Positions 1,561 through 22,380 of a DNA stretch of 37,094 nucleotides are shown in pieces. The number at the start of each line of letters is the position of its first letter. Position 1 is the first letter of the stretch. The notes beneath the pieces were generated by a model. It saw only the letters and a program-made list of their open reading frames with translations. It ran no database searches and was not told the origin of the DNA. Origin of the DNA: Octopus bimaculoides (Eukaryota); NCBI RefSeq assembly GCF_001194135.2, contig NC_068988.1:95569373-95606466 (forward strand), given 5' to 3'. Position numbers and translations under genes: made by a program.

Positions 1561-1590
1561 TTTTTCCTAATATTTATTACAGTTCTTAAA

Positions 1591-1782
1591 GTGGCGAGCT
1601 GGCAGAACCGTGAGCACACCGAGCGAAATGCTTAGCGGCATTTTGTCCGTCTTTACGTTCTGAGTTCAAATTCCACCGAGGTTGGCTTTGCCTTTCATCA
1701 TTTTGGGATCGATAAAATAAGTACCCGTTGAACCGACTTACCCCCTCCTCAGAAATTGCTGGCCTTGTGCCAAAATTTGAAG
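1591..1782 (+). mobile_element. tRNA-derived SINE family A (GGCGGCGAGCTGGCAGAA head), tail T2
   Basis: A-box TGGCAGAACCG, B-box GAGTTCAAATTCC; more than 10 homologous copies in window; probably one of the described octopus OK/OR families (name not assigned). Confidence 0.9.
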
Positions 1783-2129
1783 CCAACATTATGTTCTGAT
1801 TTCGAATCTCACCCAGATCAACTTTGCTTTTCAGCCTTATTTGTACCAATCAAACATTGTTGTATCGCAGTGCTTCAACGGTACTTTATTTTATCGACCA
1901 CAAAATGGCTGACCTTCAGCTTATTATTGTTGTGCTTATTTTTCTCTTCATTTTTTTTTTTTTTTCGTCTTTATTTTTTCTTTCGCTTTCTGTCGGAAAA
2001 TCTCGTTTTCGCTAACCTTACATGTGAGAACATGCGAGAATATTGTAAATATTTGCTGACAAAGTGCTCCTATCAGTTTAATGATTGCCTGAGGGAGCAA
2101 TGAATAGAATCGGAATACGTCGATGAGTT

Positions 2130-2536: not shown

Positions 2537-2546
2537 NNNNNNNNNN

Positions 2547-5359: not shown

Positions 5360-5575
5360 TCTTATTTCTCTATTGCCCACAAGAGGCTCAACATAGAGGG
5401 GACAAACAAGGACAGACAAAGGGATTAAGTCGATTACATCGACCCCAGTGCGTAACTGGTACTTAATTTATCGACCCCAAAAGGATGAAAGGCAAAGTCG
5501 ACCTCGGCGGAATTTGAACTCAGAACGTAACGGCAGACGAAATACTGCTAAGCATTTCGCCCGACGTGCCGCCCT
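5360..5575 (-). mobile_element. SINE family A, tail T1
   Basis: Reverse complement of the 10055 copy, head partly deleted. Confidence 0.9.
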
Positions 5576-6109: not shown

Positions 6110-6296
6110 GGCGAGTTGGCAGAAACGTTAAGCATTTCGTCCGTCCTTACGTTCTGAGTTCAAATTCCGCTGAGGTCACTTTGCCCTTCATCCTTTCGGA
6201 GTCGGTAAAATAAGTACCAGTTACGCACTGGGGGCTCAACGTAATCGACTTACTCCCTCCCCCAAACGTGCTGGCCTTGTGCCAAAATTTGAAATA
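6107..6296 (+). mobile_element. SINE family A, tail T2
   Basis: Head, B-box and tail GCTGGCCTTGTGCCAAAATTTGAAA. Confidence 0.9.
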
Positions 6297-9890: not shown

Positions 9891-10054
9891 ATCAGTGAGA
9901 TGGATCTGCTAAGGCCCAATGGAATGATAAGGTCCATTTAAAATGTTCTTTTGCGATTCCGGTGGGAAGAAAAGAACGTATTTTTATTCCACAAAGCCTA
10001 AAGTTCTATAAAAGTCTTGGAATGCTAATGCTATCCTCGCAGAAATTGAGTAAA

Positions 10055-10273
10055 GGCGGCGAGATAGCAGAAACGTTAGAACGCCGGGCGAAATGCTTAG
10101 CGATATTTCGTCTGCCGTTGCGTTCTGAGTTCAAATTCCGCCGAGGTCGACTTTGCCTTTCATCCTTTCGGGGTCGATAAATTAAGTACCAGTTGCGCAC
10201 TGGGGTCAATATAATCGACTTAATCCCTTGTTTGTCCCCTCTATGTTTAGCCCCTTGTGGGCAATAAAGAAAT
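10055..10273 (+). mobile_element. SINE family A, near full length, tail T1
   Basis: Complete head/body/tail, highly similar to the 19055 copy. Confidence 0.95.
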
Positions 10274-15807: not shown

Positions 15808-15924
15808 AGTTATTTACTTTTGTCTCTGTCTTTGACCTGTATCTAGTTGATCCGATGCCCGGTGGTCTCCTTCCAAATCCTCAAGGAATCTTATTCGAAA
15901 TAAATTGATATCACTCGGGCGATT

Positions 15925-16050
15925 GGCCATGTCGTTGGAACTCCGGATGAAATACGTTGTGATATCTCTTCCGGCTCTCAACGCTTTGAGTTCAAATTCT
16001 GCCGAAATCCATTTTGCTTTTCACCTATTCTGGGTCGATAAACAAAGGAA
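15925..16050 (+). mobile_element. Degenerate SINE family A, truncated shortly before the family D insertion
   Basis: GAGTTCAAATTCTGCCGA..TTTTGCTTTTCA..GGGTCGATAAA. Confidence 0.65.
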
Positions 16051-16070
16051 CCAACGCTGGTATAATCCTC

Positions 16071-16444
16071 TTTGAGAGATGAGGAATTATTTACATTTGA
16101 CGGATATTTGTCCTCGTCTTGTTTGTTGTTAACACAACGTTTCGGCTGATATACCCTCCAGCCTTCATCAGGTGTCTTGGGGAAATTTCGAACTTAGGTT
16201 CTCATTCCTAAGGTATTTTTCGATATTATTATTCAGGTCACTGCCTGGAATCGAACTCGGAACTCGGGTATATGGCGTAGTGGTTAAGAGCGCGGGCTAC
16301 GAACCCCAAGATTCTGAGTTCGATTCTAGGCAGTGACCTGAATAATATGAAGATCGAAAAATATTTGATGGAGGCTGGAGGGTATATCAGCCGAAACGTT
16401 GTGTTAACAAACAAGATGAGGACAAATATCCGACAAATGTAAAT
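16071..16444 (+). mobile_element. Family D copy 1: inverted 3' arm (16071-16262) plus tRNA-headed hammerhead SINE (16266-16444)
   Basis: Left arm is the reverse complement of the element from B-box to 3' end; right arm has A-box 16273-16283, anticodon loop CT-ACG-AA, B-box 16318-16326, an about 45-bp deletion, and ends at TGTAAAT. Confidence 0.9.
16131..16176 (-). ncRNA. Type I minimal hammerhead ribozyme (Penelope-type, palindromic stem III)
   Basis: Minus strand GACAC-CUGAUGA-A-GGCUG(GAGGGUAUAU)CAGCC-GAAA-CG-UU-GUGUU: stem I GACAC/GUGUU, 5-bp stem II, core intact, GUU cleavage triplet. Confidence 0.8.
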
Positions 16445-16586: not shown

Positions 16587-16815
16587 GGCGCGTGTCGTAA
16601 TGGTTAGAGCCTTCCGACTTACGACCAAACAATTGAGTTCGATTCCTAGCGGCGCATTCTGTCCGTGAACAATTCCCTGAAGTTACACACGTCTATCTTT
16701 AAAAAACAAGTAGAAGGCGGTATTGGACAAACGTAGTCCTACGTACACAAAGAGACAGGATGGTCATTCTGGAACGTCTTTAAGCATAGAATTGACTGCT
16801 ACTAAACCCCAACAC
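16587..16815 (+). mobile_element. tRNA-headed SINE joined to the family E tail
   Basis: GGCGCGTGTCGTAATGGTTAGAG head, GAGTTCGATTCC B-box, then GACAGGATGGTCATTCTGGAACG tail shared with family E. Confidence 0.65.
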
Positions 16816-18433: not shown

Positions 18434-18645
18434 TTCAAATTTTTCCACAAGGGCAGCAATTTAGGAGGAGGGGATGAGTTGATTAGATCGACCCCAGTAC
18501 GTAACTGGTACTTAACTTATCATTCCCCGAAAGGATGAAAGGCAAAGTCGACCTCGGCAGAATTTGAACTCAGAACATGGTGGACGAGCGAAATATCGCT
18601 AAGAATTTCGCCCGACGTGCTAACGATTCTGCCAGCTCCGTTACC
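18434..18645 (-). mobile_element. SINE family A, full length, T2-like tail
   Basis: Reverse complement of family A head/body. Confidence 0.9.
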
Positions 18646-19054: not shown

Positions 19055-19285
19055 GGCAGCGAGATGGCAGAAACGTTAGCACGCCGGGCCAAATGCTTAG
19101 CGATATTTCGTCTGCCGTTACGTTCTGCGTTCAAATTCCGCCGAGGTCAACTTTGCCTTTCATCCTTTCGGGGTCGATTAAATAAGTACCAGTTACGCAC
19201 TGGGGTTGATGTAATCGACTTAATCCCTTTATCTGTTCTTGTTTGTTCCAGTCTATGTTTAGCCCTTATTGGGCAATAAAGAAAT
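19055..19285 (+). mobile_element. SINE family A, full length, tail T1
   Basis: Complete head/body/tail. Confidence 0.95.
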
Positions 19286-22060: not shown

Positions 22061-22186
22061 TCGCACTGCCATGCGTTACCATCACCGTCAACACAATCGC
22101 CACTCTTATCATGTTTACATCCACCAACGTGAACGAGTCTCGATCTGCTCGGCCGGTGACAAGAACAATAACAACGTAGTTCTGTA

Positions 22187-22347
22187 TTTGAGAGATGAGG
22201 AATTATTTACATTCTTTACATTTGACGGATATTTGTTCTCGTTTTGTTTGTTGTTAACACGGGCATATGGCGTAGTGGTTAAGAGCGCGGCTACTAACCC
22301 CAAGATTCCGAGTTCGATTCCAGGTAGTGACCTGAATAATAATAACA

Positions 22348-22380
<33 letters not shown>

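What the first reader, a model, noticed from the sequence alone, without database searches (positions are those of the whole stretch)
22250..22270. Inverted arm of copy 2 ends exactly at the predicted ribozyme cleavage site
Seen: the inverted arm reads ...GTTTGTTGTTAACAC (ends 22260) and abuts the first G of the tRNA head (22261). On the minus strand it begins GTGTTAAC, the first nucleotides 3' of the predicted scissile bond (GAAACGUU/GUGUU). Inference: this arm is a DNA copy of the 3' self-cleavage product, joined by template switch to a full-length Pol III transcript. That would be a genomic fossil of in vivo cleavage. It is one junction, so chance is not excluded; copy 1 breaks elsewhere (16262).
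Basis: partly seen in the sequence, partly recalled or inferred. Interest (0 to 1): 0.85.

Follow-up and report, generated by a model that had tools for sequence, protein, structure and literature searches.

The report
Ribozyme-bearing SINE inserted head-to-head
Two old double insertions of a small ribozyme-carrying mobile element sit head-to-head in this animal-like genome, and in one the shorter copy starts exactly at the predicted ribozyme cut site, which is an intriguing but single coincidence that only a genome-wide count can confirm.

Summary
The inverted arm of copy 2 (22187-22260, minus sense) begins GTGTTAAC. It abuts G22261, which is position +1 of the tRNA-like head.

Under the published minimal hammerhead (min-HHR) numbering for Penelope-like elements (PLEs), the core reads CUGAUGA-A-GGCUGG...CAGCC-GAAA-C-G-U-U|GUGUU. 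That G is therefore the first nucleotide 3' of the scissile bond.

The element is a ~237-nt tRNA-promoter SINE with a PLE-type 3' module. Both loci show the known PLE insertion signature: a 5'-truncated inverted copy directly upstream of a full copy, and an 18-nt "tail" on one end only.

Run-off reverse transcription of a cleaved RNA, followed by an end-to-end template jump, explains the blunt junction economically. But this is one junction of two. Chance gives about 0.5% per junction, about 1% for either of the two, and about 6.5% if ±3 nt is allowed.

A reverse-transcriptase stall at the folded ribozyme predicts the same end. No further copies could be retrieved from any collection, so the decisive breakpoint histogram was not run.

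Verdict: a real feature and a new member of a known kind. The cleavage-fossil reading is plausible but unproven.

The parts
22187..22260 (-). Copy 2, inverted 5'-truncated arm (74 nt). It starts at G1.1 of the hammerhead (22260). It runs through the AC-rich 3' module and the 18-nt tail (22187-22204). It contains a 9-nt internal duplication.
22261..22518 (+). Copy 2, direct full-length arm. It comprises the tRNA-like head from +1, an (AAT)n expansion, and a hammerhead region (CTGATGA 22435-22441, GAAA 22463-22466). The cleavage-equivalent bond is 22470|22471. The arm ends at AAATGTAAAT(A) without a tail. Core flank mutations are C15.2>U and helix I GUGCC.
22260..22261 (.). Copy 2 junction: blunt 5'-end-to-5'-end join (…AACAC|GGGCAT…), with no filler and no microhomology.
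16071..16262 (-). Copy 1, inverted 5'-truncated arm. It starts inside the B-box region (consensus position 46). It carries the only intact minimal hammerhead in the window and ends with the 18-nt tail (16071-16088).
16126..16176 (-). Intact minimal hammerhead. Helix I 5' strand is GACAC; core is CUGAUGA (C3 = 16171); there is an unpaired A. Helix II is GGCUGG/UCAGCC. Then follows GAAA-CG-UU, with the cut between 16136 and 16135, and helix I 3' strand GUGUU.
16254..16268 (+). Copy 1 junction: tandem duplication AACTCGG AACTCGG. Its last GG overlaps the GGG start of the direct arm.
   Evidence: read directly
16266..16444 (+). Copy 1, direct arm: full tRNA-like head, then a ~43-nt internal deletion that removes the helix I 5' strand. 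The core is mutated to TTGATGG. It ends at AAATGTAAAT without a tail.

Best explanation
The element is a ~237-nt non-autonomous retroelement with three modules:
- a degenerate tRNA-derived head with Pol III A and B boxes;
- a body;
- a 3' module of the Penelope-like-element (PLE) kind, made of a minimal type-I hammerhead without helix III, an AC-rich stretch, and two alternative 3' ends 18 nt apart (the "tail").

Both loci are PLE-type double insertions. The target was nicked on both strands, and each 3'-OH primed reverse transcription of one RNA copy. The two cDNAs therefore point towards each other and were joined in the middle by a template jump.

In copy 1 the left cDNA stopped inside the tRNA head and joined with slippage.

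In copy 2 the left cDNA is only 74 nt and ends on the complement of G1.1. The most economical reading is that its template was the 3' product of hammerhead self-cleavage. Cleavage would probably occur in an intermolecular RNA dimer through the AACGUU palindrome. Reverse transcriptase then ran off the 5'-OH end and jumped onto the 3' end of the full-length cDNA made on the other strand.

Shown: the anatomy, the motif, the exact coincidence, and the PLE-type architecture.

Inferred: priming on both strands, the template jump, and cleavage in vivo.

My confidence in the architecture (a PLE-type twin insertion of a min-HHR SINE) is about 0.85. My confidence that the copy 2 end was made by ribozyme cleavage is about 0.4.
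For: Motif:
- All sequence features of the published min-HHR are present in the intact copy (criteria from PMC4209133).
- Shuffles expect 0.005 such motifs per window.
- Helices I and II appear in the monomer minimum-free-energy fold.
- The double-hammerhead pairing is pseudoknot-free and evaluates at -24.3 kcal/mol, against -27.2 for two monomers.

Architecture:
- In 2 of 2 loci an inverted 5'-truncated arm lies immediately upstream of a full-length arm.
- Both inverted arms carry the 18-nt tail AATTCCTCATCTCTCAAA, and both direct arms stop at AAATGTAAAT.
- This matches the PLE description in PMC8557442.
- It also matches the in vitro finding that a PLE protein nicks and extends both strands and starts reverse transcription at two internal sites that define the tail (PMC11167929).
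- There is no poly(A).
- Both arms contain the 3' end, so two template copies were used.

Junctions:
- Copy 2 is blunt and joins two natural RNA 5' ends, tRNA +1 and G1.1.
- Copy 1 shows a 7-nt slippage duplication plus GG microhomology.

Chance of an exact hit: 0.0047 per junction.

The arms of each pair differ by 7-12%. They are therefore not assembly palindromes.
Against: - Only one of two junctions lies at the site, and the coincidence was selected post hoc.
- No other copy of the family could be found, so no breakpoint distribution exists.
- PLE min-HHRs cleave poorly in vitro.
- For the one PLE studied biochemically, ribozyme mutants inserted normally and no RNA-seq reads began or ended at the cut site.
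- Rfam's hammerhead models do not score the motif even at E<=10. This is expected for a motif without helix III.
- No partner PLE (RT plus GIY-YIG) is in the window.
- The tail is 18 nt, not 30-40.
- No clear target-site duplication was seen.
- The three bases CAC at the junction could in principle be a 5' leader or filler, since copy 1 has CTC at the same place. That would move the arm end 3 nt. The slippage reading of copy 1 makes this unnecessary but does not exclude it.
Confidence: 0.4

Rival explanations
1. Chance. Inverted arms of PLE-type insertions are 5'-truncated at essentially random positions, and this one happens to end at the predicted cut site.
For: - Copy 1 breaks at an unrelated position, consensus 46.
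- Only two junctions exist in the window.
- The nominal P is 0.009 for at least one exact hit. It rises to 0.065 with ±3 nt tolerance, and further if other landmarks would also have been called interesting.
- PLE insertions are known to be highly and variably 5'-truncated.
Against: - The match is exact to the nucleotide.
- The site was defined independently by a published structural model.
- The junction is blunt on both sides, as expected for run-off on two complete templates.
Confidence: 0.33
2. Reverse-transcriptase stop without cleavage. The folded ribozyme core blocks the enzyme just after it has copied G1.1, and it switches template there. The block would come from helix I plus the intermolecular AACGUU duplex, or from bound PLE protein.
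For: - The AACGUU palindrome begins immediately 5' of G1.1, and helix II follows.
- The PLE protein is reported to bind near the ribozyme and to be needed for its activity.
- The genomic outcome would be identical.
Against: - Stalls usually scatter over a few nucleotides.
- Stalls occur before a helix, so helix I would have been the first obstacle.
- A 4-6 bp duplex is a weak block.
- There is no direct evidence either way.
Confidence: 0.15
3. Two separate events. A full-length copy later inserted into, or next to, an older minus-oriented copy, because the PLE endonuclease recognises tail-bearing copies. The rest of the old copy was then lost.
For: - Penelope endonuclease was reported to recognise and cut DNA carrying the tail region, and PLEs tend to insert into their own copies.
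- The arms within a pair are no more alike than arms of different pairs: 88-93% versus 85-92%.
Against: - The missing part of the supposed older copy is not found on the other side of the direct arm at either locus.
- The same tail-out, head-to-head layout occurs twice.
- The copy 1 junction shows slippage and microhomology typical of a cDNA template switch.
Confidence: 0.1

Closest known systems
Minimal type-I hammerhead ribozymes of metazoan Penelope-like elements (Cervera & de la Pena 2014, PMC4209133; Lunse, Weinberg & Breaker 2017)
   Same: - CUGAUGA and GAAA boxes.
- An extra unpaired nucleotide between A9 and 10.1.
- The G10.1-C11.1 pair.
- No helix III, with palindromic 15.2/16.2.
- A short helix I (5 bp) and a longer helix II (6 bp).
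- The motif occurs in dispersed non-coding copies, sometimes as two motifs on opposite strands 100-700 bp apart.
   Different: - Here the motif sits in a tRNA-promoter SINE, not in a PLE pseudo-LTR.
- No covariation or activity data are available.
- Only one of three motif-bearing arms is still intact.
PLE insertion architecture: inverted 5'-truncated copy plus one-sided tail (Craig et al. 2021, PMC8557442; Frangieh et al. 2024, PMC11167929)
   Same: - An inverted truncated copy lies directly at the 5' end.
- Two alternative 3' ends define a tail that is present on one side only.
- The hammerhead lies a few tens of nucleotides upstream of the reverse-transcription start.
- An AC-rich region precedes the 3' end.
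   Different: - The element is non-coding and about 240 nt long.
- The tail is 18 nt, not 30-40.
- There is no tandem pseudo-LTR.
- The partner element is unknown.
Sm-alpha / Sj-alpha SINE-like elements of schistosomes (Ferbeyre et al. 1998; summarised in PMC6765202)
   Same: A Pol III-type promoter head combined with a hammerhead ribozyme in a short, dispersed, non-autonomous element.
   Different: - Sm-alpha carries a canonical hammerhead with a helix III and loop-loop contacts.
- Sm-alpha is often in tandem arrays.
- Here the ribozyme is the minimal form and the copies are head-to-head pairs.
Animal non-LTR retrozymes (Cervera & de la Pena 2020; Li, Clavereau & Pollet 2026 bioRxiv)
   Same: Small non-coding hammerhead-bearing elements thought to depend on PLEs. 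Their unit boundaries are set by the ribozyme cut site.
   Different: Retrozymes are promoter-less tandem repeats expressed as circular RNAs. This element has a tRNA-like promoter and is not tandem.
L1 twin-priming inversions (Ostertag & Kazazian 2001; from my own knowledge)
   Same: Both target strands prime cDNA synthesis, and the products join in the middle, often with microhomology.
   Different: In L1 the two segments are non-overlapping parts of one RNA. Here both arms contain the element's 3' end, so two template copies were reverse-transcribed.

Membership tests
PLE-type minimal hammerhead (min-HHR) | Catalytic boxes CUGAUGA (C3-A9) and GAAA (G12-A15.1) | tested here: met
   Exact in copy 1 inverted and copy 2 direct arms. 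Mutated to TTGATGG in copy 1 direct arm.
PLE-type minimal hammerhead (min-HHR) | Unpaired nucleotide between A9 and 10.1; G10.1-C11.1 closing a helix II of at least 4 bp | tested here: met
   CUGAUGA-A-GGCUGG...UCAGCC, 6 bp. The hairpin is present in the centroid fold.
PLE-type minimal hammerhead (min-HHR) | No helix III; palindromic 15.2/16.2; U16.1-H17 before the cut | tested here: met
   GAAA-C-G-U-U|G. ACGU/AACGUU is palindromic.
PLE-type minimal hammerhead (min-HHR) | Helix I of 4-5 bp formed by the sequence 3' of the cut and the sequence 5' of C3 | tested here: met
   GACAC / GUGUU, 5 bp with one G-U.
PLE-type minimal hammerhead (min-HHR) | Compensatory changes across a family of copies | not testable with these tools
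   Only three motif-bearing arms exist in the window, and no external copies were found.
PLE-type minimal hammerhead (min-HHR) | Self-cleavage as a dimer | not testable with these tools
   Only an energy evaluation of the dimer pairing was possible (-24.3 kcal/mol).
Rfam hammerhead families (Hammerhead_1 and relatives) | Score against the covariance model | tested here: not met
   No hit at the gathering score or at E<=10 on either locus. This is expected, because the models include helix III.
PLE-dependent insertion | Inverted 5'-truncated copy immediately adjacent to the 5' end of a copy | tested here: met
   Seen in 2 of 2 loci.
PLE-dependent insertion | Tail extension present at only one end (two reverse-transcription start sites) | tested here: met
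   The 18-nt AATTCCTCATCTCTCAAA is on both inverted arms and absent from both direct arms. It is shorter than the 30-40 bp described.
PLE-dependent insertion | Autonomous partner (RT plus GIY-YIG endonuclease) sharing the 3' module | tested here: inconclusive
   No such ORF is in the window.
tRNA-derived SINE | Internal Pol III A and B boxes at tRNA spacing | tested here: met
   TGGCGTAGTGG at position 8 and GAGTTCGATTCC at position 52.
tRNA-derived SINE | Recognisable tRNA fold or homology | tested here: not met
   ARAGORN finds none. There is no Rfam tRNA hit. No cloverleaf appears in the minimum-free-energy fold, z = +1.2.
tRNA-derived SINE | LINE-type 3' end (poly(A) or simple repeat) and target-site duplication | tested here: not met
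   The ends are AAATGTAAAT or ...CTCTCAAA. No clear duplication is seen in the flanks.
Non-LTR retrozyme / Sm-alpha-type array | Head-to-tail tandem repeats delimited by hammerheads | tested here: not met
   Only head-to-head pairs were found, with no tandem copies.
L1-type twin priming | Inverted and direct segments are non-overlapping parts of one RNA | tested here: not met
   Both arms include the 3' 47 nt of the element.

The most novel reading that the evidence does not exclude
Minimal hammerheads of PLE-type elements do cleave in vivo during retrotransposition, and the genome records it. Two element RNAs pair through the palindromic AACGUU to form the double hammerhead. A dimeric RT-endonuclease delivers them to the two nicked target strands. 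When one RNA has been cut, the result is a head-to-head insertion whose short arm starts exactly at G1.1. A genome-wide spike of 5' ends at the scissile bond would be the first in vivo evidence for the activity of these ribozymes, and a clue to their role.
Probability: 0.3. Interest if true: 0.75.

Novelty: new member of a known kind. Interest (0 to 1): 0.45.

Why it matters
Thousands of minimal hammerheads sit in animal genomes. A specialist review calls their in vivo activity and role "still a mystery" (PMC7761336). The only biochemical study of a PLE found the ribozyme dispensable for insertion in vitro and saw no RNA ends at the cut site (PMC11167929).

If truncated copies start preferentially at the scissile bond, ordinary genome assemblies would hold a cheap, retrospective read-out of in vivo cleavage. 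It could be checked in any species that has such elements.

The present window supplies the idea and one exact example. It does not supply the proof.

Tried and rejected
Searches that found nothing:
- Rfam at gathering score and at E<=10: no hammerhead or tRNA hit.
- ARAGORN: none.
- Exact scans for more copies with the 24-nt helix II/GAAA block and with a degenerate 22-nt 3'-module pattern, in viral, metagenome and prokaryote-genome collections: zero hits.
- Protein-space retrieval using the open frame through the SINE: no homologue. The same with the abundant second SINE of the window: none.
- The 205-aa ORF across composite 2 is not on record.
- The mariner fragment hit only ENA contigs at 52-74% identity. 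The two contigs fetched, L001 and L002, carry no copy and show no similarity to the window.
- Literature searches by sequence strings found nothing. No paper in the library reports breakpoint enrichment at PLE hammerhead sites.

Uninformative result:
- Unconstrained RNA cofolding prefers a loop-loop dimer and does not predict the double hammerhead.

Explanations considered and rejected:
- Fold-back at the GTTAAC palindrome: the arm joins element position 1, not its own mirror image.
- Assembly or chimeric-read palindrome: the arms differ by 7-12%.
- L1-type twin priming: both arms carry the 3' end.
- A different hammerhead register using the GUUGU/ACAAC hairpin as helix III: no U-H follows it.

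Full report
**What is there.** The window looks like a repeat-rich animal genome: microsatellites, assembly gaps, several SINE families and a mariner fragment.

A blastn of the element against the window finds exactly four arms in two loci:
- Locus 1: an inverted arm at 16071-16262 (minus sense) abutting a direct arm at 16266-16444.
- Locus 2: an inverted arm at 22187-22260 (minus sense) abutting a direct arm at 22261-22518.

The + strand reads ...gtttgttgttaacac up to 22260 and gggcatatggcgtagtgg from 22261.

**The element.** Aligning the four arms gives a consensus of about 237 nt.
- Positions 1-72 are a degenerate tRNA-derived head. It has a perfect A box at position 8 and a B box at 52. 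ARAGORN, Rfam and folding do not recognise a tRNA.
- The 3' third reads CCAAGACAC-CUGAUGA-A-GGCUGG(AGGGUAUA)UCAGCC-GAAA-CGUU-GUGUUAAC..., followed by an AC-rich stretch.
- Two alternative 3' ends follow. Both direct arms stop at AAATGTAAAT. Both inverted arms continue for 18 nt more (AATTCCTCATCTCTCAAA).

**The ribozyme.** Rfam does not score the motif even at E<=10. It nevertheless matches, feature by feature, the minimal type-I hammerhead that Cervera and de la Pena defined for metazoan Penelope-like elements (PMC4209133):
- catalytic boxes;
- an extra nucleotide between A9 and 10.1;
- the G10.1-C11.1 pair;
- no helix III;
- palindromic 15.2/16.2;
- a short helix I.

I wrote that descriptor as a script. 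It finds one intact motif in the window, in the inverted arm of copy 1. It places the first nucleotide 3' of the cut at 16135(-), the G of GTGTTAAC.

Two hundred dinucleotide shuffles of the window give 0.005 motifs on average.

Such motifs are thought to act as dimers through the palindrome. The double-hammerhead pairing of two copies is pseudoknot-free and evaluates at -24.3 kcal/mol, against -27.2 for two separate monomers and -31.4 for the unconstrained dimer. It is accessible but not the predicted ground state, in line with reports of weak, factor-dependent activity.

The other two motif-bearing arms are decayed:
- The copy 1 direct arm has a TTGATGG core and has lost the helix I 5' strand.
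- The copy 2 direct arm has C15.2>U and helix I GUGCC.

**The architecture is a known signature.**
- Craig et al. describe PLE insertions as highly 5'-truncated. [quoted passage not shown]
- Frangieh et al. showed that a purified PLE protein nicks and extends both DNA strands. It starts reverse transcription at two internal sites whose spacing is the tail (PMC11167929).
- Cervera and de la Pena already noted pairs of minimal hammerheads 100-700 bp apart on opposite strands.
- Both loci here have this layout, with the tail on the inverted arm only.
- Both arms of each pair contain the element's 3' end. Two template copies were therefore reverse-transcribed, unlike L1 twin priming.
- The arms of a pair differ by 7-12%, so they are not assembly palindromes.

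I therefore read the element as a tRNA-promoter SINE that borrows a PLE's machinery. Its closest relatives are the hammerhead-bearing Sm-alpha elements of schistosomes and the PLE-derived animal retrozymes. No partner PLE is in the window.

**The junctions.**
- Copy 2: the junction is blunt. The cDNA-sense strand ends ...AACAC, the complement of G1.1-U1.2-G1.3..., and is followed at once by GGGCATATGG, tRNA position +1. Two natural RNA 5' ends are joined with no filler or microhomology.
- Copy 1: the inverted arm stops in the B-box region. The sequence reads GGAATCG-AACTCGG-AACTCGG-GTATATGG. This is a 7-nt tandem duplication whose last GG overlaps the start of the direct arm. That is a slippage-plus-microhomology signature of template switching.
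- This reading also removes the need to postulate a 3-nt leader (CTC in copy 1, CAC in copy 2). Such a leader would shift the copy 2 breakpoint by 3 nt, and it cannot be fully excluded.

**Is it more than chance?**
- With breakpoints uniform over 212 detectable positions, an exact hit has P = 0.0047 per junction.
- P = 0.0094 for at least one of two junctions, and 0.065 if ±3 nt is allowed.
- These values are nominal, because the coincidence was noticed after the fact.
- It is suggestive, not conclusive.

**Mechanism.**
- Most likely (about 0.4): two element RNAs served as templates on the two nicked strands. One had been cut by the hammerhead. Reverse transcriptase ran off its 5'-OH end at G1.1 and jumped onto the 3' end of the full-length cDNA from the other strand.
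- Chance truncation: about 0.33.
- A polymerase stop at the folded core without cleavage: about 0.15.
- Two separate insertions with loss of the rest of the older copy: about 0.1. This rival is disfavoured because no remnant lies beyond the direct arm at either locus.

**What could not be done.**
- Exact scans of the viral, metagenome and prokaryotic collections with two conserved blocks found nothing.
- The protein collection holds no ORF derived from this SINE or from the abundant second SINE of the window.
- The composite ORF is not on record.
- Contigs reached through the mariner fragment belong to unrelated organisms.
- I found no paper in the library that reports such an enrichment.

**Verdict.**
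- The object is a new member of a known kind: a PLE-type head-to-head insertion of a minimal-hammerhead SINE.
- The cleavage-fossil interpretation is coherent and bears on an open question, since the in vivo role of these ribozymes is "still a mystery".
- It rests on a single junction.

Noticed in passing
window 16590-16660 (+): A second, different tRNA-like head, about 150 nt downstream of copy 1. It shares the B-box string GAGTTCGATTCC and is probably the head of another SINE family.
   Followed up: no
window 1589-1849, 5443-5546, 6131-6233, 10009-10272, 15851-16070, 18525-18576, 19122-19173: An abundant, unrelated SINE-like family containing ...GGATGAAAGGCAAAGTCGACCTCGGCGGAATTTGAACTCAGAAC.... 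At least seven copies are present, some as inverted pairs 550-680 nt apart. One copy lies directly left of composite 1. A peptide derived from it has no match in the protein collection.
   Followed up: partly
window 27307-27630 (-): Fragment of a Tc1/mariner transposase (Pfam DDE_3, E = 3e-7). The nearest database proteins are only 52-74% identical.
   Followed up: partly
L002 about 16100-16135 (-): An unrelated ENA contig was fetched through the mariner hit. It carries a canonical metazoan-type hammerhead, CTGATGAGTCCAAAAGGACGAAACGCGTC, with a palindromic CGCG helix III.
   Followed up: no
window 16254-16267 (+): Exact 7-nt tandem duplication AACTCGG AACTCGG at the copy 1 junction, overlapping the GGG start of the direct arm. 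This is a slippage/microhomology signature.
   Followed up: yes
window 22334-22378 (+); 16340-16365 (+); 22215-22235 (+): Changes specific to individual arms:
- an (AAT)n expansion in the copy 2 direct arm;
- a ~43-nt deletion in the copy 1 direct arm that removes the helix I 5' strand;
- a 9-nt duplication in the copy 2 inverted arm.
   Followed up: partly
window 22071-22688 (+): A 205-aa open frame runs through the whole of composite 2. It is almost certainly fortuitous and is not on record as a called gene.
   Followed up: yes
window 2537-2546, 23996-24878, 26804-26813, 28682-29268, 31703-31780: Runs of N (assembly gaps) flanked by CA/TG and other microsatellites. This is a draft-quality scaffold.
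   Followed up: no
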